Shown here piece by piece: positions 8,462-53,367 of a stretch of DNA of 64,000 nucleotides. The first letter of the stretch is position 1. Every line of letters starts with the position of its first letter. The stretch comes from Octopus sinensis (lineage: Eukaryota), in contig NC_042998.1 of NCBI RefSeq assembly GCF_006345805.1, forward strand, positions 127,782,001-127,846,000, in the 5' to 3' direction. The notes under the pieces were generated by a model. That model had not been told where the DNA came from, did not search any database, and was given only the letters and a program-made list of their open reading frames with translations. The translations under genes were made by a program, and so were the position numbers.

Positions 8462-8848
8462 ATAATCGAATAAGAAGACAAACAAAGATTTTAACACATC
8501 TTTTATGATCAGTTACAATTGTTTTTGCATTATCTATGCTTTCAGTACCGGTTCACGAAAAAGTTCGAAGTGAAAATTTGATATTCGCGGCTTTATTGTT
8601 ATTTGATTTTTGGTTCCTCTCGATTCTAAGCAAAAGATAAAAAATAGCAGGCGCACAACGTAAAAGTACACCTTTGATGCAGGTCTAAGGAATTGCCACT
8701 CTGATGTCTAAAACCGCAAATATTACGTAAAGTTTCTCTTTGAACTTTTGCGGGAAAGATGTTGAAAGCAGATATGGTACAGAAACAATTGTAACTAATC
8801 ATTAAAGATGTGTTTAAAGTCTTTCCCTCTCTTCTTATTTGGATTACA
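8462..8848. repeat. Old fold-back element, ~135-bp inverted arms (8462-8594 / 8710-8848), ~70% identity
   Basis: AATAAGAAGA...AACACATCTTTTATGATCAGTTACAATTGTTT...AAAAGTTCGAAG...TATTCGCGG is mirrored by CCGCAAATA...TTTGAACTTTT...AAACAATTGTAACTAATCATTAAAGATGTGTT...TCTTCTTATT. Confidence 0.75.
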
Positions 8849-8920
8849 TTTGTATTTGTACGTACACACATATATATATGTATGTATGTATGTATATATA
8901 TATGTATGTATGTATATATA

Positions 8921-8966
<46 letters not shown>

Positions 8967-9875
8967 GTATATATATATATTTGTATATGTATGTGTATGT
9001 GTGTTTGTATGTGAGTGTATTTGTGTGTTGTGTGATAGATAGAAAGATAAATAAATAGATAGATAAATAGATGATAGATGAAATTGAATCGTAAGTAAGA
9101 ATATTTGTTTTATTGATCAGGCAAAATGGAACAGAGAAAAATAAATTTATCAACATTATAATTATTGGGAAGATTACCATCAATTTTAGCATCAATTTTA
9201 ACATTAATATTTAATACGAAATTTTAAAATCATTTTTTTTATATAATTATATTCGAATGAGCGAAAACAAAACAAATTAATAAAATTATTTAAACCAGAC
9301 AGTTGGATTTTTATGGAAGCAGATTATAATCGAGTGAATTTATTTGAAAAATATTACAGATGCTTAATGTAATCAACGCTAATTATGTAATCAGAGATTT
9401 CTCTTTATATCTTCCTAGAAAACTACATAGAGTAGGCAAAACCATTACATTACTTAACTGAATTCTTCTTATTGGAATTGAGAAAAACATTCCCATTTGG
9501 ATTTTATTGTAGAACACAGATATGGATTGACAAGTGTGGATGTATCAGCTTGCAGTATTTTTCTGTTTCTGAGTTCCTATCCCATTGGATCTGAACTTTG
9601 CATTTTGTTTATCACACCAATGCTCTCTGTCTTGTGCTGTTTATCTCCCAGATCAAGTAGAAGTTTGGCATTCTAGCTGTTCTAGCTGAAGCTATAATTC
9701 TTTTCAGACATAATTGATTTCAGACAATATTATTCAATATTAGCTTACTTGCCTTTCAACAGGCGATGGGGTGGTAATTGGAAATATTTGGCAGTTGCAT
9801 CTAGCAACCCTATCTATCTATATATATCTATCTATCTATCTACCTACCTATCTATTTATCTGTCTATTTATCAGA

Positions 9876-9919
<44 letters not shown>

Positions 9920-10661
9920 GCACACACACATATTTGAGTGTGTATGTATGAGTTGGTTTGTATGCATACTTGTATATTTGTACATTCACATATATATATT
10001 CGTATTTATTGGTTTCAAATTTTGGCACAAAGCCTGGTCGTTATCAACACATACATACACACATACACGTACACACACATATATATATGTATGTGTATTT
10101 GAGTGAATATGAATACACAGATATGCATACGCACAGGCACATACATACATACATACATAATACATACATACATACATACATACATACATACATAATACAT
10201 ACATACATACATACATGCATACATGTATATACAAATGTATTTATCCATATTCATTCAATATACTCAGTGATATTTCAGCAAAGCGAAAAGTCAAAAAGCA
10301 TCATCATCATCATCAAATAAGGAATGTTTTAGAAACAGTGAATTTGGTCGGTATATATTGGTTTTGAGATAGGTGTTGGAGTGAAAACGCTCCCTTAACA
10401 GGAAAGACTAAGTGGAACATAAGATGCAAGTAAGGAAGTTGATAGAATGGGAGGTGTACAAGGATAAATAAGGGTCAGTTGGAGCAATGGTAAACATGTT
10501 GTATGTATATTAATAAATTTATTTATTGATGCACATACAACAGTCTATGCCAGTTGCTTTATCCAGGAATGTCGTAATCTTATTAATATGCAAACAACAC
10601 ACAAACTTACACATATGTGTGTATATATATATATATATGCATTATGTATATATATATATAT

Positions 10662-10840
10662 AGGGGAGAAATTCACAAAAAAGACGAAGACATGTGGTGT
10701 AGACAACAAACAGATGTATTAGTTTAACGCTCGGGAAGTGAAAACATCTTTAACATTTCGAGCCTACGCTCTTCCACAGAAAGGAACACAGAAAGAAACA
10801 AGGATAGAAAATAAAGAATGTGTAGTGGCTAGCGATCTAT
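10662..10840 (-). mobile_element. Short PLE pLTR-like repeat carrying a hammerhead-like motif (10748-10784)
   Basis: Homologous to 42141-42337. The minus strand contains CTTT CTGTGGA A GAGC GTAG GCTC GAAATGT T AAAG. It abuts a (TA)n run. Confidence 0.6.
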
Positions 10841-11100
10841 AGACGGCAATAGGAAAAAGCAGAAAGTGCAAAAAAAATTTTAGAAAGTAGTAAAATTTAC
10901 GAAAAGTTCAAAGGTTCAAAAGCTTCGAACGTCGTGGTGTATTGGAGCGATTTTTTCATCTACAGAGGAGTCCAGTGTAATCCATGGGCAGCAGAGGTAC
11001 AGCTGAAGTGTAGTAGGAAGTTCAGATAGAGAATCCGTAATAGTTCGCTGAGTGATATATATGTATATACATACGTATAAATATACATGTACAAATATAC

Positions 11101-11184
<84 letters not shown>

Positions 11185-11785
11185 CCAATTAAGGACTGCA
11201 TACGAAAAGTGGACAGTCAACATGCTAGATATAGACGTCAAATCGCCATTCTCCACAAAAAGTTTATGTTCTCAGATCAAACTCAACAAAACCAAAGCAA
11301 TAAACAAGTGAAAAATATACGAAATAAATATTTAACCATGTACTAAATTTAGTTTCAGCTGTTATTTTCCGCAAGGAAAAGTGCAGCATCATCAGCATGG
11401 TCCCATATAAAATGTAATTTGCTGGACTAAATGCCAACACGACACCAAAATATCGCGTGCATGGAGTCCGGCCTATTACATTTGAAATATATATTTCAAA
11501 TGCCTTTACTTTTGGCGCGATGAGACCCGAAAAAACTAGCCTGCAGCTAATAGTTAGCAGCAGTTAATTTATCGGTTAGAGAACAAATATTTATAAAATT
11601 AAATTTAGGGTAAAAATTGATATTTATCAATTAGAACCAGTGGTCTAGCATATTAAAGAAAGAATCCGAAGATTAAAATATTTATATATACCAATTAAGG
11701 ACTGCACACGAAAAGTGGACAGTCAACATGCTAGATATAGACGTCAAATCGCCATTATCCACAAAAAGTTTATGTTCTCAGATCA
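11185..11785. repeat. 95-bp direct repeat (11185-11279 and 11691-11785, 2 mismatches) enclosing ~410 bp
   Basis: CCAATTAAGGACTGCA(T/C)ACGAAAAGTGGACAGTCAACATGCTAGATATAGACGTCAAATCGCCATT(C/A)TCCACAAAAAGTTTATGTTCTCAGATCA occurs twice with an offset of 506. Confidence 0.92.
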
Positions 11786-12325
11786 TATATAATTTTATAA
11801 CACTTTTGGAGTCTCAGCCACAGTGTGTGAAGCTGAATTAAACTGTTATTAAAAAATGTAACAGCAATAAAATTTTTGGAGTGCTTTCCTCCGTGTACTC
11901 ACGCATATACATTGTGCATGTGTGTGTGCCTCTGTGACTGCCTGTATGCGTGTGTGCATGTGCACGCGTGCTTTTACTTGGTGTGTAGACATCAAATGGT
12001 GCATTGCAATATTAAATTATTTTCAGTTTCGATTTATGCTTAGTGATTTGAACATAAAATATGAATACATACATATGCATGTATATACATGCACACGCAT
12101 ATACATACATATATACGTACCTATATATATATATATATATACATGGCAATAAGAAAATGTAGGGGATCAAGAGATGGTATTCATCAATCTTTAAACATTA
12201 TATTATGTATATTTATTTTTAAAAAAACAATTATAACAATATACATACATGTATAACATATTATACTTTACATATATAAAAATACCAGTAATTGTTAAAA
12301 TATATAACGAAGAACATAGGAAGTA

Positions 12326-12380
<55 letters not shown>

Positions 12381-12407
12381 GTATGTATATATGTATGTAT
12401 ATGTATA

Positions 12408-12488
<81 letters not shown>

Positions 12489-12952
12489 TAAATTTTAATA
12501 AAGATGGGTGTATGAAAAATTAATAAAGAAGTCGAATCAGCTTTCATTGCAAGGCAAATGTTCAAGATTTGGAAGGCGGGGAAATAGTTTTTGAAATTGA
12601 GGAAGAGGAAAAAAGAAATTTACAATTTTTTTTTTTAATAATTAATATATACAAAAATTAATAAATAAGTATACCAATACAATGTAGTGTCTTTATGCTT
12701 TTAGAGTTCAATATTTGTCCTTGGAAAAACTTCTTTGGAGGATTAGGATGCTTATGTTTAAATGTATTGTTTTGTTTGAAAAGTTTGGATGCTTATTTGT
12801 CAAAACTGGAAATGGGATAGGAGTTAGTCCCTGTGAATAAGGGGAGAAATTAGTGGATTATATTCTCTTTAATTGGAATGCTCGATTGTTTCTCAAACAG
12901 GATGCTTATATCTATTTTTTTGTCAGACAGGATGTTAGAAAAGGGAATACGG

Positions 12953-13593
12953 TCATCGTGGATTTTGCTTATTAAGACGCATTTGGAATTTTTCAATAAA
13001 AAGATTCTCCTTCTCTTTCTTGTGTAGAGATTCTGTTTTTTACATTGATAGAAAGGGAATATAGGACATTTGGGATTTTTATTTCCAGCACAATCGTCTA
13101 TGTGGTTACTGAGTGGAATTTGACGGTATTGTGGGAGATTTATCTGTTCTTTATGGACTGCTACTCTTCTGCGTAAAGGAGAGCTCGTTTGTCCGATATA
13201 ATTGTGTTGGCAACCGACGCATGTAATAACGTAAATGAGATTCTCGGAGGAACAGGAGAAGTTGGTCTTGATTTTAAACTTTGCTCCTTGTTTGAATGTA
13301 AATTCAGAGCCTTCAATTAGGAAGGCGCAGGTACCACAGTTAGGGCGTGCACATTTTTTAACTGATGGGAATGGATGTGGTGTGTGACATTTGGCATTTG
13401 TTAAGAGGTTTTCAATGATTTATGTTGCCTTTTGCATTTATGGATTTTATGTGTATTGATAATATTAGTCATTTTTTAGTCAGTGGACAATAAGAGGTGA
13501 TTTTGTATGATTGTGGTGCAAACTTCGATATTTTGGGGATTGTGGGTGGAAATATATGGAAATATTTTGAGGTTGGATGTGCTACTGTGTTGG
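12953..13593 (-). pseudogene. Neptune-type Penelope-like element: linker, Cys-rich finger and GIY-YIG endonuclease
   Basis: An ATG-less open frame (13362->13021) is missing from the ORF track: VKKCARPNCGTCAFLIEGSEFTFKQGAKFKIKTNFSCSSENLIYVITCVGCQHNYIGQTSSPLRRRVAVHKEQI...HIDDC. After a frameshift it continues EKENLFIEKFQMRLNK. Upstream linker: PYISTHNPQNIEV...KCKRQHKSLK.LLTNAK. Confidence 0.9.
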
Positions 13594-13782
13594 GTAGTTT
13601 TTCATAAGATTCTTTCCATGTGATGAAACAATCATCTTGGTATCTTTTCCAGTTTTCCATTAAGTAGATGTGGAAAAGGTGTCCAAATTTCTGTCGTGAT
13701 ATCTCATAAAGTGATAGTTCGAAGAAACCTATTATGATGTTCGCAAGGACTGGTGCAGCTTTGGTACCCATCGCGGTACTTC
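13594..13782 (-). pseudogene. PLE reverse transcriptase core segment (motifs B-C)
   Basis: TAMGTKAAPVLANIIIGFFE...WKRYQDDCFITWKESYEKL. Confidence 0.9.
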
Positions 13783-14040
13783 TGGAATTCAAAACCATAC
13801 TTAACAACATACATCCAACATTCAATTCACTATGGAATTCAGCAAACATCACCTCCCTTTTCTTGATACCCTAATTATAAAAACACCTAACAGCCAAATC
13901 ACAACCGACATCCTCCACAAACCTACAGACTCACAACAATACCTCCTCTTCAGTTCATGCCACCCAAAACACACCACCTCTTCAACTTAGCTAAAAGGAT
14001 TTGCACCATTGTCTCGGATCCAAAAACTCGAGAAATATGT
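13783..14040 (+). pseudogene. PLE reverse transcriptase post-YxDD/thumb segment, inverted relative to the rest
   Basis: EFKTILNNIHP / IQFTMEFSKHHLPFLDTLIIKTPNSQITTDILHKPTDSQQYLLFSSCHPKHT / FNLAKRICTIVSDPKTREI, with two frameshifts. Confidence 0.9.
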
Positions 14041-14527: not shown

Positions 14528-14806
14528 TGTTGTTGTTGTTGTTGTTGTTTTACCTCAAACCACAAACCAGCGTCGATCGAGGCATTCCAGATGTGATAAG
14601 CGACGTTTTGGCAGAGCCATTTGGCGTCACTATTCCAACGCTGATTTGTTTGACACTAGAAATTTTTAACACCTCTCTCTTTTATTGTTTCTCTCAATTT
14701 ATTCCTTCCACTCTCTCGCTTTAGCTCTCTCTGTCTCTCACACTCTTTCTCTATCTGTTTATCTCTCATTTTCTGTCCCCTTCTCTCTCTCTCTCTCTCT
14801 CTCTCT

Positions 14807-14933
14807 CCCCTACCCATTTGTTTATCTCTCCATACGTACCCGTTTGTGAGCATATTTCTCTGTGTGTGAGAATAGGGAAAGTGTTTTTGTCGATTGTGTA
14901 GAATTAATAAATTGTAACGTTTTTTTCTCTCCG

Positions 14934-14992
<59 letters not shown>

Positions 14993-15121
14993 CCCTACCC
15001 ATTTGTTTATCTCTCCATACGTACCCGTTTGTGAGCATATTTCTCTGTGTGTGAGAATAGGGAAAGTGTTTTTGTCGATTGTGTAGAATTAATAAATTGT
15101 AACGTTTTTTTCTCTCCGTCG

Positions 15122-15126
<5 letters not shown>
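14807..15126. repeat. Perfect tandem duplication, period 185 bp, bounded by (CT)n
   Basis: CCCCTACCCATTTG...TCTCCGTCGCTCT (~134 bp) is identical at 14807 and 14992. Confidence 0.95.
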
Positions 15127-15173
<47 letters not shown>

Positions 15174-16510: not shown

Positions 16511-16544
<34 letters not shown>

Positions 16545-16659
16545 CAAAATAAGTAACAAGGATATCCAGAGATAATGCAGTGCGATCTTTTCATGCGACT
16601 CCAATTCTATATAATACTTGCATTGTTCAATTAAATGGAGTCGCATGAAACGATCGTAC

Positions 16660-16797
16660 TGCATTACCTCTGGATATCCTTGTTGCTTATTTTGATTATA
16701 ATCACCCCCATTTTGAATTTATGGATAACACCATACCCAATCCTGGTGCCTATAACTTAGATACCATATTCAACTGAATCTAAATTTTTACTGAACA
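16660..16797 (-). repeat. Copy of the head of the fold-back element at 52961-53367
   Basis: The reverse complement matches TTCAGTAAAATTTAGATTCAG...GGGGTGATTATAATCAAAATAAGCAACAAG...GAGGTAATG. It is next to a (TA)n run. Confidence 0.75.
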
Positions 16798-16833
16798 TAT
16801 ATATATATATATATATATATATAAACATATAGT

Positions 16834-16864
<31 letters not shown>

Positions 16865-16917
16865 ATAAATAATATATATATTATATATATATCTATACAG
16901 AGAAAGAGAGAGAGAGA

Positions 16918-17097
16918 ATGAGTGAGTGAGTGAATGAGTGAGTGAGTGAGTGAGTGAGTGAGTGAGTGAGTGAGTGAGTGAATGAGTGAGTGAGTGAGTG
17001 AGTGAGTGAGTGAGTGAGTGAGTGAGTGAGTGAGTGAGTGAGTGAATGAGTGAGTGAGTGAGTGAGTGAGTGAGTGAGTGAGTGAGTGAGTGAGTGA
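16918..17097. repeat. (TGAG)n tetranucleotide microsatellite with occasional TGAA units
   Basis: Directly visible, ~45 units. Confidence 0.97.
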
Positions 17098-20813: not shown

Positions 20814-22026
20814 ATGGCAATGCACAATTCACCGTATACAACTTGGAGTAGTGCGATGGATCTGAATCAGGCTACATTAGATCTCCAAGATTATCCTCGA
20901 ACAGGAATGAATAGCACTTTTCCTGCTTTCAATGATTCGAATAAATGCGATGAAATTCTATCATATTTGGCAGAACCACCTCTACAACTATGTTTCTGGG
21001 TTAAATTTGCTCTAGGTTTTTTCCTCAGTTGCTTGGCTGGACTAACTATTTCTGGCAACTGTTTAGTAATTGCAGCAGTATTAACACACAATCACTTGAA
21101 AAGTTACACAAATGCCTTTGTTGTCTCCTTAGCCATTTCAGACACGCTTGTCGGCGGCGCCGTTATGCCCTATGCCATCAGACAGTTAATGTGGGATAAC
21201 CACTGGGGACATGGCCTCATTCTGTGTCGTATCATCATCTGCTTAGATGTAACATTCACAACAACATCCATCTTTCATCTGGTCTGTTTAGCTGGAGATC
21301 GCTATCTTGCAATTTGTCGACCATTTCAGCATCAGAAAGTAAAAAAGAGACATGTAGTTATTTCTATAATCCTTTGTTGGACTGTACCACTGCTAATTTC
21401 GTTTGTTCCTATCGCCAACGAATGGAATTTGAAAGGCATAGAGGCAATATATGAATGTATAGCTCCACCTGGTAGTGATACGTGTGTTTTTCTTGTTAAC
21501 AAAGCATTTGCGTTTACGTGCTCAGCTGTAGCCTTTTATATTCCGTCCGCCTTCCTCGTAATGTGCAACGCACAGATTTATACAGCGGCCAAAAGACAGG
21601 CAAAACAAATAAGGACGCTTGAGCAAGCAATCATTCAGAACAAAAACAAACGGAAAGCTTTCAAACACGAAGCAAAAGCTGCTAAAACGTTAGGAATAAT
21701 AATGGGTTGCTTCTGTGTTTGTTGGTGCCCATTTTTCATTATAAACGTTATTGATGCTATTATCCAGTACCAAACCCCCTACTACTTATGGCAGGTGGCA
21801 GTTTGGCTAGGATATAGCAACTCTACAATGAATCCTTTTTTATTTTATTTTTTTAATCGATCATTCCGAATAGCATTCCGTCGGATTCTAAGAATGAAAA
21901 CGAACCACGGAACAGTGGCACAATGTGATGATTTGACCACTGCCGCAGCAGGTTCTCAAGGTTCTGACATCAATTGTAGGTATTTTCCAGCTCAAACAAA
22001 TGGATTTGAATACGAATGTATATATA

Positions 22027-22095
<69 letters not shown>

Positions 22096-36515: not shown

Positions 36516-36554
<39 letters not shown>

Positions 36555-36712
36555 TATATAATTAGGGCTTAGTAAAATAAAATAAATTACTTTGCCAGAA
36601 CACTTGGTGAAATTGATTAATTAATTTTACCCTCAATTGTTGATATATATATGTATATATATATATATGTCTGTGTGTGTGTGTGTGTGTATACATATAT
36701 ATATTTTAGAGA

Positions 36713-37473: not shown

Positions 37474-37519
<46 letters not shown>

Positions 37520-37610
37520 ACACACACACACAAACACACATACACACACACACAAACACACACACACACACACACATATCTATCTATATATATATATATA
37601 TATATAATAT

Positions 37611-37976
37611 GAGGGAATATTATTCCAAACTTACAGGGAAAAATTCAATTTAGAAATACTAAATCAAATTTCACAAAATATAGTATAATATATATATTAG
37701 AAAAAAACCCCAACATTTTATCAATTCAATGATGAAAAATTAAATTATACCATTAAGAAAAATTAAATATTATAGAAAGATTAAAATATAAGATAAAACA
37801 TATAACAATGAATAAGTAATGTGCAAGTTCTATTTATTATTTTGCACATTACTTAATCATTGTTATATGTTTTATCTTATATTTTAATCTTTCTATAATA
37901 TGTAAGTTTTCTTAATGGCATAATTTAATTTTTCATTATTTAATTGATAAAAGGTGTTTTTTTCTGATTTATATAT
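37611..37976. repeat. Fold-back element: unpaired head plus ~135-bp arms (37691-37826 / 37842-37976, ~90%), 15-nt loop
   Basis: ...AGATAAAACATATAACAATGAATAAGTAATGTGCAA | TTGCACATTACTTAATCATTGTTATATGTTTTATCT... The head contains CCAAACTTACAGGGAAAAATTCAATTTAG. Confidence 0.9.
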
Positions 37977-37997
37977 GTATATATATATATATATATA

Positions 37998-38324
37998 TTT
38001 AAAGAGCTAAAAAACCACTATGTGGTCAGTCATATGGTAGAAATAGATCACCTACGATCAAACTACAAAGAAAAAAGTAATTTTCATCGGTCTTGCCCGC
38101 ATATTGTTCTGGTTACCGGTGAATTATTCTCTAGAGAACATGTTTTTCTTTGTAGTTTGATCGTAGGTGATCTACTTCTAGCATATGGCTGACCACATAG
38201 AGGTTTTTTAGCCCTTTAAATATACACATGTATTAGAATTTTCTCTGATTTTTCAGATTTTTGCATGATAGGCTACTGGTTTTAAATTGATATTAATTAA
38301 ATTAATATTCAATTTATCTCCCTC
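37998..38324. repeat. Fold-back element: ~78-bp arms (37998-38076 / 38143-38220) plus an unpaired tail ending CTCCCTC
   Basis: TTTAAAGAGCTAAAAAACCACTATGTGGTCAG...CACCTACGATCAAACTACAAAGAAAAA is mirrored with ~5 mismatches. Confidence 0.9.
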
Positions 38325-38374
38325 TTTACTTAAATATATATACATATATATATACATATATACATATATATATG

Positions 38375-38437
<63 letters not shown>

Positions 38438-38510
38438 TCGATGTTAATTGAATTAATATCTAATTTCTCACCCTCATTTGAAATATATATATATATATAA
38501 TAATGATATT

Positions 38511-38930
38511 TGGGAGTAAATCCAAACTGACAGGGAAAAATTAGATTTAGGATTAAATCTAATTTTACAGTAGAAATATAAATTAAATTAGATTTAAAAC
38601 CACTATTAGGCAAAGCAAACAGTGAAAAACATAAACCAAAACATAGAAATAAAATTAATTAATATAATATACAAAATATATAAAATCTAAAATTCAAAAT
38701 TTTAATTATTTAAATTTAAAGTTAAAAATTTAAAATTATTAATTTATTAATTTATATTTATAAACTAATAATTTTAAATTTTTAACTTTAAATTTAAATA
38801 ATTTAAATTTTGAATTTTAGATTTTATATATTTTGTATATTATATTAATTAATTTTATTTCTATGTTTTGGTTTATGTTTTTCACTGTTTGATTTGCCTA
38901 ATAGTGGTTTTATCTCTAATTTAATTTTTA
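38511..38930. repeat. Fold-back element: head plus ~170-bp near-perfect arms (38578-38747 / 38760-38930), 12-nt loop
   Basis: AAAACCACTATTAGGCAAA.CAAACAGTGAAAAACATAAACCAAAACATAGAAATAAAATTAATT... is mirrored with ~3 mismatches over the inner ~150 bp. Confidence 0.92.
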
Positions 38931-38960
38931 TATATATATATATATATATGCATATACTAC

Positions 38961-39330
38961 AGAGGGAGAGCGCTAAGCAATGGTAAGTTACATATTAATG
39001 TTATTATTAATCAGAATACGCTTGAGGCACGTTCGAACCGGTGAACAACCTACTCACTGTGTTTTCTCACGGAAGAGCATAAGAGGATTAATTAGCGTTT
39101 TCAATCAGCTCGTAGCGTCGCCTGCCTGGTGTCCGTGACCGAAGAGGAGATAGCTACTCCAAAATGCTTGCATCTCACGGTGTGAGTAGGTGGCGCTACG
39201 AGATGACATAGGTATATACACGCCATTTGTCAACAAACGGGATATATTCTCCGTGACACAAAGAAGTAAATGGCTTGTTCACTGGTTCGAACGTGCCTGA
39301 AGCATATTCAGACAGATAATAGCATTAATA
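38961..39330. repeat. Fold-back or MITE-like element, ~55-bp outer arms (38993-39048 / 39275-39330) with nested inner inverted repeats
   Basis: TATTAATG...GCTTGAGGCACGTTCGAACCGGTGAACAA vs TTGTTCACTGGTTCGAACGTGCCTGAAGC...CATTAATA. Inner pairs: CCTACTCAC/GTGAGTAGG and CTCGTAGCGTCGCCT/AGGTGGCGCTACGAG. Confidence 0.85.
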
Positions 39331-39546
39331 TATATATATATACATATAAAGTGATATAGAGAGATACATACACATATATATATATATTAATGCTATCATC
39401 AGTCTGTATATATATATATATATATACATATATATATACATATACATGTATATATATATATATATACATATACATGTATATATATATATATATGTATGTA
39501 TCTCATATATATATATATATATATATAAAGAGATAGAGAGAGATAC

Positions 39547-39590
<44 letters not shown>

Positions 39591-39609
39591 GTGTGCGTGT
39601 GTATGAATA

Positions 39610-41441: not shown

Positions 41442-41451
41442 TATATATATA

Positions 41452-42082
41452 TAAAATGGGGAGGGCCGGTTTATAGTATTGCCTTAGGTTTCCCGTTCAT
41501 AAAGGGTTTAACTTTATGGCGTATCGTCAGATCCCAAAGACTTGTTGGCCCATGACCTCTTAGAAATATGAAGAAGGAAATGTCTCACTACTGAAAGGTA
41601 ACAATTGGGGATTATCTCCCTTTCCCAATGGCTATCGACGTCCGGCTAGCGCTGGTATTGCTAGGGTTTACTAATACTTCGACTTCATAGACGACCCCTT
41701 CAGTTTCACCATGGCTTCCTACCGCACATGTGTTGCGGTCCCTGCATGAACATCCAGTTCTTCCTGCGGCTTAGGGGCACTAACTACGATCCTCTTAATA
41801 CTGGGGGCACAACTAAACGGGACTCTAACGTTGTATCTGTTGAATATGAGCCCGTACCTATGAAAGATAATGAAATGCTTGGCACAGCCTGAATTCGATA
41901 GCCATTAGCAAAGGCAAATAATCCCCACTTGTAACCTTTGAGTATTGAGGCATTTCCCCCTCCATATTTTGAAGAGGCCATGAGACAACAGGTTTTGGGG
42001 ATCTGACTATACGCCGTAAAGCTAAACCCGTTGTGGACGGGAAACCCAAGGCAATCCCATAAACCGGCCTGCTCCAATTTTA
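41452..42082. mobile_element. Head-to-head pair of PLE pLTR-like tails (41452-~41715 minus; ~41800-42082 plus)
   Basis: Both are homologous to 900-1097 (…ATAATCCCC…CATATTT…TAAAG.TAAACCC…GGGAAACC.AAGGCAAT..CATAAACCGGCC). The left copy ends at (TA)n and the right copy at TAATATAT. Confidence 0.8.
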
Positions 42083-42140
42083 ATATATTACTGCTTTACA
42101 GAGTGTGCTTCTTCTTTCGAATTTATGTTTTATATATATA

Positions 42141-42379: not shown

Positions 42380-42441
42380 TGATGTACGTTTGTGTGCGTG
42401 AATGCATATGTATATGTGTGTAGTGTGTGTGTAAGTATATT

Positions 42442-42825
42442 GAGGGTAAAAATTATTGAAAATAATAATTTACACTAGTGACCAGCATGCAGTGTCCGTA
42501 GACTGCAAATTAATTTTGTATATATGTGTATGACCATAGGCAATTATACACTAAGAGGAAAATCACTAAGTGGCTTTCTTGCTTGCTGAAAGAAGATGTC
42601 AGATCTTCAAACTACGAAAAATACGTTCTCAAACATAGCGCATTGGACGTAAGCGAGCAAGACAATATGAAAAAAAAATTTGAAGACCATATTGTCTTGC
42701 CCGATTACATCCAAGGCGCTATGCATGAGAACATATTTTTCGTGGTTTGAAGATCTGACATCTTCTTTCAGCAAGCAAGAAAGCCACTTAGTGGTTTTCC
42801 TCTTAGTGTATAATTGCCTATGGTT
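42442..42825. repeat. Fold-back element: head plus ~137-bp arms (42533-42669 / 42688-42824, ~90%), 18-nt loop
   Basis: The same peptide (HRQLYTKRK.TKWLSCLLKEDVRSSN.EKYVL.HSALDV..QDNM) appears on both strands in the ORF track (42526+ and 42855-). Confidence 0.93.
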
Positions 42826-42870
42826 ACACACACACACACGTACACGCACACGCACACCTATATATATATA

Positions 42871-42910: not shown

Positions 42911-43632
42911 TATATATATACATATATACACAAACATATACATATATGTATGTATACCTGTGTAAGTATACATAACTAAACGTGCGTGTTTGTGTGTATG
43001 TTTTTATGTATGCAAATATGATACACACACGCGCACACACACACACACACACAAGTACATATGTTGATATCCACGCATATATGTATGTGTTTGTGTTAAA
43101 TGAATTTACTTATGTGAGTTTCCCGGTGTTTGTATACGTATATGTGGTACTTTTCTTCATGTATTGCTATGAACATTTTTCTTACAACCACTATCATACA
43201 CAAATATATTATTTTTTTTTTAGTTTTTGTTTTTTTGTCAAAGCGCTTATTTTTACTGAATACACTCGCTTTGAATACAAAGAGAATCCGTTGGAGTAAG
43301 AGAAAAAATATATATAGCATGAATGATTGGTTAATTGTGTAAAGAACAGAAGGTTCGGGGGGAAAAAGGGAAAAAGTGAATATGAAGAAAGAAGCAACTC
43401 GAATTCTCGATGTAGAATAAATCAATTAAATTTTCAAAGAATTACTGGAAAAATAGATGGGAAATATGAAAGAATGGAATCATGAATGAAACAAAGAAAG
43501 TCAGAAATAATATAAGAATGAAGATAGGTCATAAAAATACTGAAAACCATAAACAAACCTAATTATCGATGATGCTGATGATGATCATAACAATCATGAT
43601 GATAACAGAAATGGATATTCTTTTTTTTTCTG

Positions 43633-44470
43633 CCCTAGGAACAGGGCCCGAAATTTTGGGGGAGGGAGTCATCGATTAGATCAGCCCCAGTACGCAACTG
43701 GTACTTAATTTATCGACCCCGAGAGGATGAAAGACAAAGTTGACCTCGACGGAATTTGAACTCAGAACGTAAAGACAGACGAAATACTGCTAAGCTTTTC
43801 GCCCGGCCTGCTAACGTTTCTGCCAGCTTACCGACGTATAACAGTAATGGATATTATTATATTCAAGCGGGGAGCTTGCAGAATCGTTAGCGCGAAATGC
43901 TCAGCGGTATTTCGTCTGTTTTTACGTTCTGAGTTCAAATTCCGCCGAGGTTGACTTTGCCTTTCATCCTTTCGGAGTTGATAAATTAGATACCAGTGAA
44001 ACACTGGGGTCGATGTAATCAACTAGCTCTTCCCCACAATTTCAGGCCTTGTGCCTGTAGTAGAAACGATTATTAAAGGCGGCGAGCTGGCAGAAACGTT
44101 AGCACGCCGGGCGAAATGCTTTGCCGTAATTCGTCTATCTTTACGTTCTGAGTTCAAATTCCGCTGAGGTCGACTTTGCCTTTCATCATTTAGAGGTCGA
44201 TAGATTAAGTACCAGTTGCGTTCTGGGGTCCATCTAATCAACTTCCCCCTCCCCCAAAACTTCGGGCCTTGTGCCTAGAGTAGAAAAGAATATTATTATA
44301 TTCGCACATATAAGGCGGCGAGCTAGCAGAATCGTTAGCATATCAGACAATGTACTGAGCGGCATTTCTTCAGGCTATTTATGTTCTGAGTTCAAATCTA
44401 GCAGGATTGCCTTTCGGGATCTATGAAATGTAGTACAAGTAAGATACGGGGGTCGATGTAATCGACATGA
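43633..44470. mobile_element. Four copies of the dominant SINE: 43633-43833 (-), 43865-44072 (+), 44077-44295 (+), 44312-44470 (+)
   Basis: Each has a GGCGGCGAGCTGGCAGAA-type head and a CTGAGTTCAAAT B-box. Confidence 0.9.
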
Positions 44471-45479: not shown

Positions 45480-45810
45480 CAAGTCGTGCAGGCCTGGTCG
45501 GCCACCAAAGGAGCCCTTGTAAATTATAATACAGCTATTGTTGACAACGGAATATGTGCAACATGTAAAAAGTGTGGGGGGATTAATTGTTTCAATTAAT
45601 TTTGGGGATTAAAAAGACATGTCAAAAGACTTCATGCTGTGGCAGTGGTTCATTTTGTCAGCCAGTACAACTGTACATAATGCAATAAAATGTGAAAATC
45701 ATTGGTGGGGCTCAAGAGTCATATAAGTGGCTCACGTTGCATAATTTAATGACTAATTTCAATGACTCTTTCTAGCAATGGCTTTGGTCGTATACGAGAA
45801 AGCAGCCACT
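45480..45810 (+). mobile_element. Decayed 3' end of an RTE-like LINE with two C2H2-like fingers
   Basis: CATCKKCGG...GLKRHVKRLH and YNCT*CNKM*KSLVGLKSHISGSRC, then a short UTR (GGTCGTATACGAGAAAGCAGCCACT) running into TA/CATA repeats. Confidence 0.55.
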
Positions 45811-45840
45811 ATACATATACATACATACATATATATATAC

Positions 45841-45902
<62 letters not shown>

Positions 45903-45914
45903 TATATATATATC

Positions 45915-45952
<38 letters not shown>

Positions 45953-45953
<1 letters not shown>

Positions 45954-47962
45954 GGTATTGTATTGGCATCCTTTCTGTCTCGGGAGACAATGGAGTTGCG
46001 CATTTTTTTTTTTTCAGTCTAGTCCGGCTTTTATATTTTATGTCCTGATACATTTCCTGCTGTGGCTGTGTAGTCCTATCCTGGACAAACACTCCCTCTG
46101 GCAGGTACCGCAAATGTAGCGAAGACTGTTCCTCTTGTTTACGTCTCTTCCTTTCTTTCCATTTCTCCTCTCTCTCTCTGTCACTCTTTTGTATTCCCTC
46201 TTTTACTGTACGTCGCCATTCTCCACGGTTGCCGGCGACTGCCTCCCAACCGCTAATATTGATGTTGCAGGCCTTCATATCCCTTTTGCAAACATCCTTG
46301 TAACGTAAGATCGGTCTACCCACAGACCTAGTACCCCTAGCAAGCTCTCCGTAGAGTATGTCCTTGGGGTTTCTGCCATCTTTCATACGGCTAACATGCC
46401 CAAGCCATCTCATACTTGTGTGAGGAGTGCAAACATGCTTGGTATTCCTGCTTGCCTGAGGACATCTTTGTTGGGGATATGATTCTGCCATTTGATGTGG
46501 AGGATTTTTCGGGGGCAGCGCAGGTGAAAGATGTTTAGGCGACGTTCTTGGCGTGTGTATAGCGTCCAGGTCTCGCTTCCATACAGTAGAGTGCTGAGTA
46601 CACATGCCTGGTAGATCTTCATTTTCGTGGTCTTGGTCAGCTTATTGTTGTCCCAAGCCCGTTTGGAGAGTTGGGCCATCGCAGCAGCTGCCTTGCCAAT
46701 GCGTATATTGAGCTCAGCGTCAAGGGATAGGTTGTAGGTGACGGTAGAGCCCAGATAGATAAACTTCTCCACCTCTTGTAATCTGTGGTCTCCAATCTGT
46801 ATGTTTGGGATGTCCGATGTAGCCTGGCCCATGATGTTGGTCTTCTTAAGGCTGATAGCTAAGCCAAAGTCGTTACATGCTTGCTCAAAACAGTTAATGA
46901 GCCTTTGGAGGGCTTCTTCTGTGTGTGTTACCAGAGCGGCATCATCAGCAAATAACATCTCCTTGATCAGGACGTTTCTGATTTTGGTCTTGGCACGCAG
47001 GCGCTAGAGATTGAACAGTTTCCCGTCACTTCTACTGTGCAGAAACACTCCATCATCTGATGTCTGAAAGGCATGTGACAGTAAGAGTGAGAAGAATATG
47101 CCAAACAATGTAGGAGCGAGGACACAGCCTTGCTTTACCCCGTCTTTTATTTGGAAGGCGGCTGATGTTGAACCGTTGTGCTGTATGGTGCCTTGCATGT
47201 CATCATGGAAAGACTTGATGATCCTCAGCAGCTTTGGTGGACATCCGATTTTTTGGAGCAGGAGGAAGAGGCCTGTTCTGCTTACCGAGTCAAAAGCCTT
47301 TGTTAGATCAATGAAGGCCATATATAATGGCATTTTCTGCTCTCTGGACTTCTCCTGAAGTTGGCCTATGGAGAATATCATATCGATAGTTGATCTGCTT
47401 CTTCTAAAGCCACACTGCGATTCTGGATAGATTCGAGAAGCAAGTAGTTGTAGCCTGGCCAGGATAACGCGGGCAAAGGTCTTTCCAACAGTGCTTAGAA
47501 GGGATATACCACGGTAATTGTTACAATCACCACGGTCACCTTTGTTTTTGTAAAGCGTAATGATGTTGGCATCCCGCATATCCTAAGGGACTGTACTCTC
47601 TTCCCAGCACTGACACAGAAGCTCATGAAGGTGCCGAAGCAGGATGGTGTTTTTGTCGGCTTTCATGATCTCTGAGGGGATGCCGTCTTTTCCCGGAGCC
47701 TTATTTCTTGCTAGGGAGTCAACAGCCTTGGTGAGCTCTGCTATAGATGGCGGACTGTCAAGTTCGCACATGACTGGCAAGATCTTGACATTCTCGACTG
47801 CAGCCTCAGCCACTGTGGTCTCCCGTGAGTAGAGATCCTGGTAGTGCTCCACCCATCTATCCATTTGCTTCCCTTGATCCCTGATGAGATCTCCAGTAGT
47901 TGATTTCAGAGGGGCTGACTTGGTTGCGGATGGACCGAGGGCCTTCTTCAAACCGGCATATC
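45953..47962 (-). mobile_element. 5'-truncated RTE-clade (BovB-like) LINE, RT domain to 3' end
   Basis: KAPGKDGIP; NYRGISLLS; ESQCGFR; FIDLTKAFD; GVKQGCVLAP; LFADD; YLGS; LYGSETW; RWLGHVSRM. One frame runs 47960->46410 with TAG at 47583-47585 and 47004-47006 and a frameshift near 46420. The 3' UTR ends in (TA)n. Confidence 0.95.
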
Positions 47963-48013: not shown

Positions 48014-48018
<5 letters not shown>

Positions 48019-48307: not shown

Positions 48308-48323
48308 GGAGACAGCATAGACA

Positions 48324-50384: not shown

Positions 50385-50605
50385 TATAACTCGAAACTTA
50401 CGGGGAAAAATTCAATTTAGTATTAAATAAAATTTCACAATATAAATATATACTATATATAAATGAGAGAAAAACCACTATTATGTAATTATTTGAATTA
50501 AATAATGCTTTTTTTAATTTATATATAGTATATATTTATATTGCGGAATTTGATTTAATACTAAATTGAATTTTTCCCTGTAAGTTTGGAGTTATACTTC
50601 CTAAT
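50385..50605. repeat. Fold-back element, ~80-bp arms (50385-50463 / 50517-50596) of the CCAAACTTACAGGGAAAAATTC family
   Basis: TATAACTCGAAACTTACGGGGAAAAATTCAATTTAGTATTAAAT... is mirrored by ...ATTTAATACTAAATTGAATTTTTCCCTGTAAGTTTGGAGTTATA. The loop contains AAAAACCACTATTATG. Confidence 0.9.
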
Positions 50606-51261
50606 ATTATATATACGTAAGGGGGGGGGGCTAGTTCGGTATAGTCTGCACACTCCGACAATATTATTAGAATATTTAATATCAAGACTACGAGTAGGGG
50701 TATTTGTACCCAATATTTCTGTCTTGTGTGTATGTATATCATATAGAAGCGTATGTCCGCATATGTATGTATGTATATATGTATGTATGTATAAATCAAT
50801 TACGTCATTGTTCCTGGTATACACAGTTCGTTTGATATCGTAGCTATTTAAAACTCACATATATCTTTAGCTTCACTTTTACAATGATATTATATTCTAA
50901 TAACTTTATATATCATTGCGTATCAAAATCTTTTGTCATAGGTCTACGCCCGAGTTACTGTTAACAAAGACCTAATACTGTGTCAGTGAGCAGGCAGAGG
51001 AAATATTTTGATACTTAATAATTATATTACAATATTAAAAATAAAACAAAAGTGAATATACGAACATAGTCGTGTATGAAATGATTATCATCAGTTGACC
51101 ACAATAAGATTGTCTCACACAGTCTCGGATCAAATTACTGTTAGAAAACAAAGTATAAATCCGGTATGTGTGTGTGTGTGTGTCTGTGTGTATATCTGTG
51201 CGTGTGCGAGGAGTGTGTGTATGTTCATATACATATTCTTATATAAGCCATATATGCATCT

Positions 51262-51411: not shown

Positions 51412-51498
<87 letters not shown>

Positions 51499-51546
51499 CA
51501 TACATACATACACACATACATACATACATACATACATACATACTAC

Positions 51547-51615
<69 letters not shown>

Positions 51616-52240
51616 CATTTATGCATACATGTATGTATGTGTGTTTCTGTCAATGTTTCTCGCACCACCACTTCTTGACAACCGGTGATGCTGTGTTTAC
51701 ATCCCCATAACTCAGTTCGTCTCAAGAAAGTGATAAAATAAGTACCAGGATTAAAATAATTACTGGGTCGATTCAGTCGACTAGAAATTCAAGGCGGTGC
51801 CCCAGCATGGCCGCAGTCTAATAACTGAAACAAGCAAAAGTTAAAAGATATTTGTACACACACACACACAAACACACACAGATATGAATGTATGTAAAGG
51901 CGCAGCTATGGGTGTGTGGTTAAAACGCTCGCTTTACAACCATGTGATTTCAGGCTTAGTACTACAGTGAGACATATTGAGCAAGTGTCCTCTACGATAA
52001 CCTCGGACTGACCTATGCTTTCTGCGTGAATTTGGCAAACGGAAAATGTGTTGAAGCCTGTTGTATACATATATGTGTGTCTTTGTTGTTGTGTTTGTTC
52101 CCGATCACCTCTTGACAGCGGGCGATGGTTTGTTTTCGTCCACGTAAATTAGCGATCCGACCAAATAACTAAAACAAAAAAAATGTACAGTTGATTTGTT
52201 TGACTAAACATTTCTGTGCAGTATCCCTGCAGAATAAAAG
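51262..52240 (+). mobile_element. Two tandem SINEs of the family at 4903 (51262-51850 and 51895-52240), each with an internal microsatellite
   Basis: GGTTCAGTCCCACTGCGTGGCACCTTCGGCAAGTGTTTTCTAC head/core and an AAGGCGGTGCCCCAGCATGGCCGCAG tail. Confidence 0.8.
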
Positions 52241-52652
52241 GTGTGTGTATGTGTGTGTGAGTGTGTGCGTTTGTGCTTGTGTTTGTGTGCGTATGTGTGT
52301 GTGAGTGTGTGTGACTAAGTGTAAACGTGTGTGTTTGAACATGGGAATTGTTAAGTGCTCAACATCATCAGTTGGAGTCTTGAACAAATGAATTCAACAT
52401 ATCCCCTCGAGAAGGTTTCGAGAAGACTCACTTGACAGAAATAGGGTAGAAGCCTGTTGACTGGACAGTCCTGTAATTCAAAAGCCTTAGTCTTGTGAAG
52501 CTGATGGCACACTGATTCTAACGGGTAATTACGATAAAGGTACGCGTGTATGTGGTATACTCGGCCACTTGTAACGATGATTCAACGGGAACATTGTGCA
52601 GTTCATGGAATGACTGAACGTTCATATCTTGAAATCGACACGAAAAAGTCCA

Positions 52653-52724
<72 letters not shown>

Positions 52725-52727
<3 letters not shown>

Positions 52728-52849
52728 TAGGGAGTATAACTCCAAACTTACAGGGAAAAATTCAATTTTAGTATTAAATCAAATTTCACAATATAAAAAT
52801 ATAAAATATGTTTGGCTTGCATAATAGTGGTTTTATCTCTAATTTATAT

Positions 52850-52850
<1 letters not shown>
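52725..52850. repeat. Head of the CCAAACTTACAGGG family joined to an inverted distal piece
   Basis: TATTAGGGAGTATAACTCCAAACTTACAGGGAAAAATTC..., then GCATAATAGTGGTTTTATCTCTAATT. The latter is the reverse of the segment that follows the head at 38580-38605 and 50460-50485. Confidence 0.8.
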
Positions 52851-52893
<43 letters not shown>

Positions 52894-52899
52894 ATATGT

Positions 52900-52947
<48 letters not shown>

Positions 52948-52960
52948 TGTGTGTGTGTGT

Positions 52961-53367
52961 TCAGTAAAATTTAGATTCAGATGAATATGGTACTTAAGTC
53001 AAAAACACTAGAATTTTGTACGGTTTATCCGTATAAACCCATGGGGTGATTATAATCAAAATAAGCAACAAGTATATTCGAGGTAATGTGCTACAATCGT
53101 TTCATGCTACTTCATTTTAGTAAACATTAAGTATTACATCAGTTTTAAAATGTCGAGCAATCTTCAGCCACTTATAGAAATTTTCCAATCAAATGGACAA
53201 TGCACATTCTTATGTCTATTTCGTTTGCCAACATTATAAAGAGGATAGATATACAGACAGAGAGGTTAATTTCATTCTTAAGAACATGATAGTGTTTAAT
53301 AAAATGAAGTAGCATGAAACGATTGTACCACATTACCTCGTATATACTTGTTGCTTATTTTGATTAT
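52961..53367. repeat. Fold-back element: head plus ~75-bp arms (53052-53127 / 53292-53367) and a ~165-bp loop
   Basis: ATAATCAAAATAAGCAACAAGTATAT.CGAGGTAATGTG.TACAATCGTTTCATGCTACTTCATTTTA is mirrored with 2 mismatches. Confidence 0.92.

What the first reader, a model, noticed from the sequence alone, without database searches (positions are those of the whole stretch)
8462..53367. A family of short fold-back elements whose turning point differs in each copy (likely hairpin products of PLE-type ends, not MITEs)
Seen: 8 hairpins (8462, 37611, 37998, 38511, 38961, 42442, 50385, 52961) and one remnant (52725). Most have an unpaired head beside a TA/CA run, usually starting GAGGG/GGGAG. An arm and loop follow, and the returning arm stops at a TA/CA run before reaching the head. 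Four copies of one family (CCAAACTTACAGGGAAAAATTC head: 37611, 38511, 50385, 52725) fold back at different points, and several hairpins share AAAACCACTA. The PLE pLTR tails and hammerhead-bearing repeats in this window also have a G-rich end at (TA)n. Known: MITE TIRs are fixed and symmetric, whereas PLE insertions often carry a variable inverted 5' pLTR. Inference: the palindrome is made anew at each insertion by hairpin or snap-back priming, which would make these non-autonomous PLE-mobilised hairpin elements seeding long dsRNA/cruciform substrates.
Basis: partly seen in the sequence, partly recalled or inferred. Interest (0 to 1): 0.72.

Follow-up and report, generated by a model that had tools for sequence, protein, structure and literature searches.

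The report
Lopsided fold-back transposons in octopus microsatellites
This stretch of an octopus genome holds a real, related set of short hairpin-forming mobile elements that sit inside (TA)n repeats and have one extra unpaired end; how they are built fits the copying style of Penelope-like retroelements, but no sequence link to one was found.

Summary
The hairpins are real: self-complementarity E-values run from 1e-23 to 1e-165, and two folds give z = -33 and -14.5. The same families occur in an independent Octopus sinensis assembly, so they are not assembly artefacts.

Most copies share one plan: (TA)n, a 30-105 nt unpaired head (G-rich motif, usually a stem-loop), forward arm, variable centre, then a returning arm that ends at a fixed, family-specific point in a TA/CA run. 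Families A, C and D are related. B, B2 and perhaps E are a second group.

The outer ends are not inverted repeats of each other. In family B, copy-specific substitutions appear on both arms: arms are 88-96% alike within a copy and 73-89% between copies. So arms are re-copied from each other.

Other variants are a half element ending at another copy's turning point, solo ends, and two-headed forms.

This fits known Penelope-like element (PLE) biochemistry: both target strands primed, two reverse-transcription start sites, and a one-sided tail. However, heads match neither the window's only PLE nor its LINEs, and no hammerhead was found.

The main rival is a (TA)n-targeting fold-back DNA transposon, as in plant SaTar/MuTAnT. 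Verdict: observation confirmed, interpretation partly supported.

The parts
37609..37986 (+). Family A copy. Head 37609-37677 (GAGGGAATATTATTCCAAACTTACAGGG..), forward arm to 37826, 15-nt loop, returning arm 37842-37986. (TA)n on both sides.
37985..38334 (-). Family C copy in minus orientation. Arms 37985-38075 / 38143-38233 (91%), 67-nt loop. Head lies on the right, 38236-38334, ending ..CTCCCTCTTTACTTAAA(TA)n.
38435..38482 (-). Solo family C head of 48 nt. (TG)n on its inner, truncated side and (TA)n on its outer side.
38506..38936 (+). Family A copy and the best-preserved hairpin. Head 38506-38575 contains a 13-bp stem-loop. Arms 38571-38751 / 38756-38936 (95%), 4-nt loop. The returning arm ends ..AATAGTGGTTTTATCTCTAATTTA before (TA)n.
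38960..39334 (+). Element E. Head CAGAGGGAGAGCGC.. (38960-38988), arms 38989-39073 / 39250-39334 (79%), 176-nt unpaired interior.
42441..42839 (+). Family D copy. Head 42441-42517 (TGAGGGTAAAAATTATTG.. plus stem-loops), arms 42518-42669 / 42688-42839 (91%). The (CA)n(TA)n after the returning arm mirrors the TATATATGTGTAT linker that precedes the forward arm.
50386..50609 (.). Family A, two-headed form. The head is present on both arms (50392+ and 50569-). Short arms around AAAACCACTATTATG.
52725..52848 (+). Family A remnant. An 85-nt head joined to the last 38 nt of the returning arm (52809-52846, 92% to 38886-38923).
52960..53367 (+). Family B copy. Head 52960-53047, forward arm 53048-53126, 166-nt unpaired interior, returning arm 53293-53367. 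(TG)n on the left, (TA)n on the right.
16540..16796 (-). Head 16704-16796, forward arm 16633-16703, ~26-nt loop, returning arm 16540-16606. Absent from the orthologous O. bimaculoides stretch.
36553..36650 (-). Family D mini element of 96 nt. Two G-rich heads face each other between (TA)n runs.
8458..8851 (.). Symmetric inverted-repeat element (arms 76% alike, 113-nt spacer). No unpaired head and no relative found. Probably a different, ordinary MITE-like element.
37476..39602 (.). Modular array of five elements and one solo head laid end to end. Each is separated by (TA)n or (TG)n, and none interrupts another.
12487..13870 (-). Context: the window's only Penelope-like element fragment. RT ORF 13472-13870, GIY-YIG endonuclease ORF 12853-13419 with a CX4CxxC linker, and a 3' UTR running into (TA)n at 12328-12486.

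Best explanation

The mobile unit, written in the sense of its presumed RNA, is: body, a short TA-rich linker, then a 30-105 nt 3' module.

The mechanism I think most likely is retroposition by a Penelope-like (GIY-YIG endonuclease plus reverse transcriptase) machinery:
1. The enzyme cuts both strands of the AT-rich target.
2. Each cut end primes a cDNA from the unit RNA.
3. The two cDNAs enter in opposite orientation, with their variably 5'-truncated ends meeting in the middle. That junction is the turning point.
4. One cDNA starts at the distal start site and keeps the head. The other starts at the proximal site in the linker and lacks it.

Both arms are therefore identical at birth. The outer ends are fixed and unlike each other, and the centre varies.

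Shown: the anatomy, family relations, asymmetric ends, concerted arms, variable centres, the truncated and half forms, and the microsatellite setting.

Inferred: the RNA intermediate and the enzyme.
For: Anatomy: repeated in 10 one-headed copies of families A, B, B2, C, D and E, in the window and in O. sinensis loci L004 and L007.

Asymmetric ends: the outer ends are not inverted repeats.

Concerted arms, family B: of 73 columns, 12 are concerted, 14 are private to one arm and 3 are mixed, and no difference separates all forward from all returning arms. Within-copy identity is 0.96, 0.88 and 0.92; between-copy identity is 0.73-0.89.

Concerted arms, family A: the arms of 38511 are 95.5% alike, yet only about 75% like the L007 copy.

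Variants that fit single or paired 5'-truncated cDNAs:
- L007:20549-20820 is a head plus forward arm that stops within about 10 nt of the turning point of 38511 and has no returning arm.
- Solo head at 38435-38482.
- Solo returning-arm end at L007:4244-4288.
- 52725, with both halves short.
- Two-headed forms at 50386-50609, 36553-36650 and L003:8876-9401.

Family B loops: the loops of the shorter copies are homologous to the head-side interior of the longest copy.

Head structure: stem-loops with z = -2.5 to -6.1 in six copies.

Literature:
- A purified PLE protein cleaves and extends both strands of AT-rich DNA and starts reverse transcription at two internal sites in a stem-loop. The 'tail' is the stretch between them (PMC11167929).
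- PLE insertions often carry an inverted 5'-truncated copy and a tail at one end only. Naiad PLEs prefer (TA)n and occur in Octopus (PMC8557442).

A PLE fragment ending in (TA)n lies in the window.
Against: - No similarity above chance between heads or arm ends and the 3' end of the only PLE copy available, or of the two LINEs. One of 60 tests reached p<0.02.
- No hammerhead motif.
- No partial tandem (pLTR-like) copies seen.
- Heads are 30-105 nt, against 30-40 nt for known PLE tails.
- In family B the returning arm has the same inner boundary in two of three copies. This is unexpected for independent truncations and reads more simply as an inherited inverted repeat with internal deletions.
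- Arm homogenisation could also come from gene conversion or repair synthesis.
- The sample is small: about 64 kb plus about 144 kb of O. sinensis DNA.
- No empty-site pair with clean junctions was available.
Confidence: 0.45

Rival explanations
1. They are non-autonomous class II (DNA) fold-back transposons that target (TA)n, like the plant SaTar / Micron / MuTAnT / TAFT elements (Mutator-like) or a hAT-type relative. On this view the head is a one-sided subterminal region. The long arms are an inherited inverted repeat. The different centres are internal deletions. The arms are kept alike by gene conversion, or by snap-back during gap repair after excision.
For: - Plant SaTar and MuTAnT elements are 200-1700 bp fold-back elements flanked by (TA)n. 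They are stacked in modular arrays without interrupting one another, often without a visible target-site duplication, have G-rich tips (GGGG), and about 25% of copies lack part of an arm (PMC5907723; PMC4486113). The 37.5-39.6 kb array looks the same.
- All family B copies share the same outer ends, and two of three share the inner repeat boundary, with nested interior losses.
- Both ends are conserved across families: heads at p<=0.01, and arm bases AGAG..AAAACCACTA.
- Short 5-7 nt matches between the two ends exist (A: TTAGGG / TTAGAG; C: TAAAGAG). They resemble hAT-type YARNG tips; that consensus is from my own knowledge.
- Mutator, hAT and Tc1-mariner families are reported as recently active in O. 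vulgaris (PMC13282606).
Against: - No terminal inverted repeat between the two outer ends above chance.
- Flanks of 52960-53367 ((TG)n against (TA)n) and 42441-42839 are incompatible with a simple target-site duplication.
- The best-preserved copies are all one-headed.
- Concerted change in arms of only 73-85 nt needs an extra process.
- No transposase with matching ends was seen in about 290 kb.
Confidence: 0.33
2. They are SINE-like retroposons driven by a LINE whose 3' end is a stem-loop followed by a (TA)n tail. The returning arm would be added by snap-back self-priming of the first cDNA strand. On this view the (TA)n runs are partly the elements' own tails rather than targets.
For: - Both LINE fragments in the window end in a small stem-loop 25-40 nt before a (TA)n run. 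This is the same layout as the head read on the opposite strand.
- The solo head and the solo arm end have (TA)n only on their outer side and (TG)n on the truncated side.
- Loops of short family B copies continue the head-side strand, as snap-back predicts.
Against: - No sequence similarity to either LINE 3' end.
- LINE integration is not known to give two alternative 3' ends or regular inverted pairs. Published work contrasts PLE with R2 and L1 on exactly this point.
- Interiors of 166-700 nt (52960-53367; L004:5300-6605) are long for snap-back loops.
Confidence: 0.12
3. The hairpins are not mobile elements. They are either assembly artefacts or palindromes made in place by replication errors at microsatellites.
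For: - Long hairpins next to long (TA)n runs are hard to assemble.
- The O. bimaculoides ortholog has an N gap at one such site.
Against: - Families A, B, C and D recur at unrelated loci.
- They also recur in a second, independently assembled species with the same head-arm plan and 75-90% identity.
Confidence: 0.03

Closest known systems
Penelope-like element insertions (pLTR, inverted 5'-truncated copy, one-sided 'tail'); PLE-derived non-autonomous elements such as MRC1 of Chlamydomonas and animal retrozymes
   Same: - AT-rich or (TA)n target.
- Inverted pair of copies meeting at truncated 5' ends.
- Two alternative outer ends, so an extension sits on one side only.
- A stem-loop in the region where reverse transcription would start.
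(PMC8557442, PMC11167929)
   Different: - No coding capacity.
- No hammerhead.
- No tandem pLTR seen.
- The extension is 30-105 nt rather than 30-40 nt.
- No sequence similarity to the PLE copy at hand.
- Hairpin-shaped non-autonomous PLE derivatives did not turn up in the papers I searched.
SaTar / Micron / MuTAnT / TAFT: (TA)n-targeting fold-back Mutator-like MITEs of plants
   Same: - Small fold-back elements flanked by (TA)n.
- Modular end-to-end arrays.
- Target-site duplications often not visible.
- G-rich tips.
- Many copies lack part of an arm.
   Different: - Those elements are symmetric, with terminal inverted repeats and G-rich tips at both ends, and have Mutator-like autonomous partners.
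- Here one end carries a unique head, the outer ends are not inverted repeats, the host is an animal, and no partner is known.
Foldback elements with concerted arms (Drosophila FB and Galileo; recalled from my own knowledge)
   Same: Long arms within a copy are more alike than arms of different copies. Centres vary.
   Different: Those are much larger and symmetric, with a known transposase (P superfamily for Galileo), and do not target microsatellites.
Helitron / Helentron non-autonomous elements (e.g. DINE-1)
   Same: - Asymmetric ends.
- No terminal inverted repeat.
- A hairpin near one end.
- Insertion at A/T-rich dinucleotides.
- Association with microsatellites.
   Different: - No 5' TC or 3' CTRR termini in families A, C and D, read directly from the sequence.
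- The hairpin here is 150-430 nt and is the bulk of the element, not a 16-20 nt terminator.

Membership tests
MITE (TIR class II non-autonomous element) | Terminal inverted repeats at the two outer ends | tested here: not met
   Head end against returning-arm end of the same element: mean local score 13.5, against 13.6 for cross-family pairs. Only 1 of 11 reached p<0.05. Repeats of 5-7 nt cannot be excluded. Three two-headed copies are symmetric.
MITE (TIR class II non-autonomous element) | Fixed-length target-site duplication | tested here: inconclusive
   Most flanks are (TA)n, which hides any duplication. The flanks of 52960-53367 and 42441-42839 differ on the two sides.
SaTar / MuTAnT-type microsatellite-targeting fold-back MULE | Flanked by (TA)n and stacked in modular arrays without nesting | tested here: met
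   Array at 37476-39602. (TA)n or (TG)n lies at both ends of nearly all copies.
SaTar / MuTAnT-type microsatellite-targeting fold-back MULE | Termini shared with an autonomous Mutator-like element | not tested
   No octopus MULE sequence was available. No transposase ORF was seen in the window or loci.
PLE-type insertion / PLE-mobilised non-autonomous element | Inverted pair of 5'-truncated copies with an extension (tail) on one side, in AT-rich DNA | tested here: met
   Ten one-headed copies, three two-headed copies, plus a half element and solo ends. This is a structural match only.
PLE-type insertion / PLE-mobilised non-autonomous element | 3'-end sequence similarity to an autonomous PLE | tested here: not met
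   Compared with the single PLE 3' end in the window, p>0.04 for all heads. Other octopus PLE families, including Naiads, could not be obtained.
PLE-type insertion / PLE-mobilised non-autonomous element | Hammerhead ribozyme in the repeat (canonical PLEs and retrozymes; absent from Naiads) | tested here: not met
   No Rfam hammerhead hit at gathering score (whole window), at E<=5 (36-56 kb) or at E<=1 (9-19 kb). The CTGATGA..GAAA pattern is not enriched: 5 hits against 1.3 expected, none in a hairpin.
Helitron / Helentron | 5' TC and 3' CTRR termini with a short subterminal hairpin; insertion at AT or TT | tested here: not met
   Read directly. Heads of A, C and D start TTAGGG / TGAGGG / AAGAGGG, and ends do not read CTRR. 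Family B does start TCAG after a T.
SINE (LINE-dependent) | 3' tail shared with a partner LINE; internal pol III promoter | tested here: not met
   No similarity to the two LINE 3' ends. No tRNA, 5S or 7SL match in Rfam. No A or B boxes seen by eye.

The most novel reading that the evidence does not exclude
Octopus genomes carry an undescribed class of hairpin-shaped, non-autonomous retroposons made by Penelope-like enzymes. Each insertion would be a fresh inverted pair of cDNAs primed from both strands of a (TA)n target, with a one-sided tail. The copies would then be a natural in vivo record of the both-strand priming and dual start sites so far seen only in vitro. They would also be a large source of long perfect hairpin RNA and DNA in an animal known for heavy RNA editing.
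Probability: 0.35. Interest if true: 0.7.

Novelty: new variant of a known kind. Interest (0 to 1): 0.5.

Why it matters
How Penelope-like elements integrate is poorly understood. The only biochemical study reports priming on both target strands and two internal start sites. If these octopus hairpins are products of that machinery, thousands of short genomic copies would let one read start sites, truncation points and junctions directly. They would also define a minimal RNA substrate for experiments.

If instead they are DNA transposons, they would be an animal counterpart of the plant (TA)n-targeting fold-back elements, with an unusual one-sided end.

Either way they help explain three things: why octopus (TA)n microsatellites are crowded with repeats, why such regions assemble badly, and where many long hairpin-forming sequences in this genome come from.

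Tried and rejected
- Hammerheads. Rfam at gathering score and at permissive E-values found none, only spurious microRNA-like hits on microsatellites and hairpins. A CTGATGA..GAAA pattern scan added nothing.
- More copies. A metagenome scan for the family A head returned 0 hits. O. sinensis loci L003, L005, L006 and L010, and ENA contig L011 (species not identified), held no copy of families A-E.
- The two RT ORFs at 45.7-49.4 kb. They are LINE-type: relatives carry APE endonuclease domains, and the best solved matches are L1 ORF2p and R2.
- PLE relatives. A search with the window's GIY-YIG ORF gave three hits on contigs under 2 kb. The two I read did not show a usable 3' end.
- Head or arm-end similarity to the PLE and LINE 3' ends: none above chance.
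- Terminal inverted repeat between the head end and the arm end: none above chance.
- Consensus structure across heads of A, C and D. RNAalifold found no pairs because the cross-family alignment is poor. Single-sequence folds were used instead.
- Orthologous empty site. Only 16540-16796 lay in the O. bimaculoides stretch I could fetch. That species has a different ~3-kb insert and an N gap in the same (TA)n, so no clean junction was available.
- Considered and rejected: Helitron (termini do not fit), retrozyme (no ribozyme), and tRNA-type SINE (no promoter boxes, no Rfam hit).

Full report
**Where we are.** The window comes from an Octopus genome. A single-exon 5-HT4-like receptor ORF (20814-22148) is 98% identical in protein to O. 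bimaculoides. Window positions 14-31.8 kb align to that species at 82-93% DNA identity. The window averages about 35% G+C and is dense with (TA)n, (TG)n and other microsatellites.

Self-complement BLAST E-values within 3-kb tiles run from 1e-23 to 1e-165. Folding as single-stranded DNA gives z = -33 for 42441-42839 and z = -14.5 for 52960-53367 against dinucleotide shuffles. The shared head 21-mer occurs 5 times against 0.00 expected. AAAACCACTA occurs 6 times against 0.19 expected.

The same families, with the same layout, occur in O. sinensis loci fetched through unrelated LINE genes. Family A is at L007:20549-20820, family B at L007:12943-13231, family C at L004:12282-12650, and family D at L004:7460. 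So these are not assembly artefacts or local accidents.

**Anatomy.** Read with the head first, a typical copy is:
- a (TA)n or (TG)n run;
- a head of 30-105 nt that does not pair with the rest;
- a short TA-rich linker;
- the forward arm;
- a loop or unpaired interior of 4 to about 700 nt;
- a returning arm that ends in the next (TA)n or (CA)n run.

The head begins with a G-rich motif (GAGGG, GGGAG, GGGTG). This is usually followed by a stem-loop of 10-15 bp whose sequence differs between families. Folding z-scores are -4.8, -3.8, -6.1, -3.6, -2.9 and -2.5 in six copies; the stem-loop is weak or decayed in the others. G-rich pentamers reading away from (TA)n runs occur at 20 flanks, against 3 for their complement.

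- 8462 is a plain symmetric inverted repeat.
- 37998 has its head on the right, at 38236-38334.
- 50385 has heads on both arms.
- There are further members at 16540-16796, 36553-36650 and 38435-38482.

**Family relations.** Heads of families A, C and D are alike beyond shuffled controls (many pairs at p<=0.01). Their arm bases share AGAG..AAAACCACTA. Family B is related to a 1.3-kb element at L004:5300-6605 (B2), which has 250-nt arms, a 700-nt interior and, again, one head. Its arm base also resembles that of element E at 38960 (p=0.01).

**The ends are fixed and unlike each other.** Within a family the head-side boundary and the arm-side boundary are the same to within a few bases. For family A the arm end reads ..AATAGTGGTTTTATCTCTAATTTA before (TA)n. 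For family B it reads ..CTTATTTTGATTAT before (AT)n. It stops at a fixed point in the linker.

The head end and the arm end of one element are not inverted repeats. The within-element score is 13.5 and the cross-family score is 13.6. Only 5-7 nt resemblances remain, and these are no better than chance. This is why I do not file them as ordinary MITEs.

**The centre varies and the arms are concerted.** In family B the three copies share an arm of about 73-85 nt, but their unpaired centres are about 26, 44 and 166 nt. The shorter centres are homologous to the head-side part of the longest.

Across 73 aligned arm columns:
- 44 are invariant;
- 12 carry a copy-specific base on both arms of a copy;
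- 14 are private to one arm;
- 3 are mixed;
- none separates all forward arms from all returning arms (read from the alignment).

Arms are 0.96, 0.88 and 0.92 identical within a copy, against 0.73-0.89 between copies. In family A the arms of 38511 are 95.5% alike, yet the copy is only about 75% like its O. sinensis relative. One arm has therefore been re-copied from the other in each copy or lineage.

**Variant forms.**
- L007:20549-20820 is a head plus forward arm that runs to within about 10 nt of the point where 38511 turns, then enters (TA)n with no returning arm.
- 38435-38482 is a 48-nt solo head, with (TG)n on the truncated side.
- L007:4244-4288 is a solo returning-arm end, with (GT)n on the truncated side.
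- 52725-52848 is a head joined to the last 38 nt of a returning arm.
- 50386-50609, 36553-36650 and L003:8876-9401 carry the head motif at both ends.
- In 42441-42839, the (CA)n(TA)n after the returning arm mirrors the TATATATGTGTAT linker before the forward arm. So the returning arm starts inside the linker.

**What is in the window besides the hairpins.**
- The two reverse-transcriptase ORFs at 45.7-49.4 kb are LINEs, not PLEs.
- A PLE fragment does exist at 12853-13870(-). Its RT is followed by a C-terminal GIY-YIG endonuclease with a CX4CxxC linker, and its 3' UTR ends in (TA)n.
- No hammerhead ribozyme was found anywhere I looked.
- Neither the PLE 3' end nor the two LINE 3' ends resemble the heads or arm ends above chance.
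- Attempts to fetch other octopus PLE copies gave only short contigs.

**Mechanism.** Two published facts make a PLE-type origin the best single explanation.

First, PLE insertions often have an inverted 5'-truncated copy next to the main copy and a short 'tail' at one end only. Naiad PLEs prefer (TA)n and occur in Octopus (PMC8557442).

Second, a purified PLE protein cuts and extends both strands of AT-rich DNA, unlike R2 or L1. It starts reverse transcription at two adjacent internal sites in a stem-loop, and the tail is the stretch between them (PMC11167929).

Apply this to a short non-coding unit. Two cDNAs primed from the two strands of a (TA)n target would enter head-to-head. Each would be truncated at a different point. 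One would start beyond the head and the other in the linker. That single process yields:
- arms identical at birth;
- unlike, fixed outer ends;
- variable centres that keep the head-side sequence;
- half elements and solo ends;
- occasional two-headed copies.

I put this at about 0.45.

**Why not higher.**
- There is no sequence link to any PLE.
- There are no hammerheads and no tandem pLTR-like copies.
- The heads can be up to three times longer than known tails.
- The near-identical inner boundary of the family B repeat in two copies reads more simply as an inherited inverted repeat with internal deletions.

Plants have a close look-alike of the other class. SaTar, Micron and MuTAnT elements are Mutator-like fold-back MITEs that sit in (TA)n and stack in modular arrays. 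They often lack visible duplications, have G-rich tips, and frequently lose part of an arm (PMC5907723, PMC4486113). The 37.5-39.6 kb array here looks just like that. With gene conversion or snap-back repair synthesis keeping the arms alike, a DNA-transposon origin remains a serious rival (about 0.33). Its weak points are the missing terminal repeats and the one-sided head. A LINE-driven, snap-back version is a minor rival (about 0.12).

**Novelty and interest.** Fold-back elements in (TA)n are known in plants, and PLE insertion architecture is known. A recent O. vulgaris repeat annotation (PMC13282606) contains no mention of hairpins or palindromes. I found no description of asymmetric, non-coding hairpin elements of this build in an animal, or of hairpin-shaped PLE dependants. 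I rate it a new variant of a known kind and of moderate interest. It would be clearly higher if a census and a match to an octopus PLE confirmed the retroposon reading.

Noticed in passing
window 20814-22148 (+): Intact single-exon ORF for a 5-HT4-like G-protein-coupled receptor (Pfam 7tm_1, E=1e-57). It is 98% identical in protein to O. bimaculoides. This identifies the window as an Octopus genome close to, but not the same as, that species.
   Followed up: partly
window 45772-47960 (-) and 48385-~50375 (+): Two different LINE fragments (41% protein identity in the RT) lie 5'-end to 5'-end with (AT)23 between them. Each 3' end has a small stem-loop 25-40 nt before a (TA)n run, so (TA)n is also where LINEs end in this genome.
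   Followed up: partly
window 12328-13870 (-): Penelope-like element fragment with a C-terminal GIY-YIG endonuclease and a CX4CxxC linker. Only three distant relatives turned up in the protein search, all on short contigs.
   Followed up: partly
window 16527-17075 vs L001:2372-5478: At the (TA)n that holds the family B hairpin, O. bimaculoides has a different ~3-kb insert and an assembly gap. The same microsatellite took different insertions in the two lineages.
   Followed up: partly
window 43623-44290: A ~200-nt SINE-like unit is present several times in alternating orientation, forming long inverted repeats. The same unit occurs in L001, L005 and L006.
   Followed up: no
window 14782-15173: A 185-bp unit is duplicated in tandem (2.1 copies, 98% matches), bounded by (TC)n runs.
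   Followed up: no
window 54000-62000: Strong strand asymmetry (GC skew +0.26 to +0.48) with many tri- and tetranucleotide arrays and long low-complexity ORFs. Cause unknown.
   Followed up: no
window 41445-42088; L005:14378-14637: Ordinary symmetric inverted-repeat elements with ends TTAAAAATGGGG.., possibly with a TA or TTAA target duplication. Classical MITEs coexist with the lopsided ones.
   Followed up: no
L005:15441-16433; L010:3359-3895: O. sinensis loci hold a PIF1-like helicase ORF (a Helitron remnant) and a small GIY-YIG ORF with a CxC motif (weak Pfam hit, E=0.005) that may be a Naiad-type PLE remnant.
   Followed up: no
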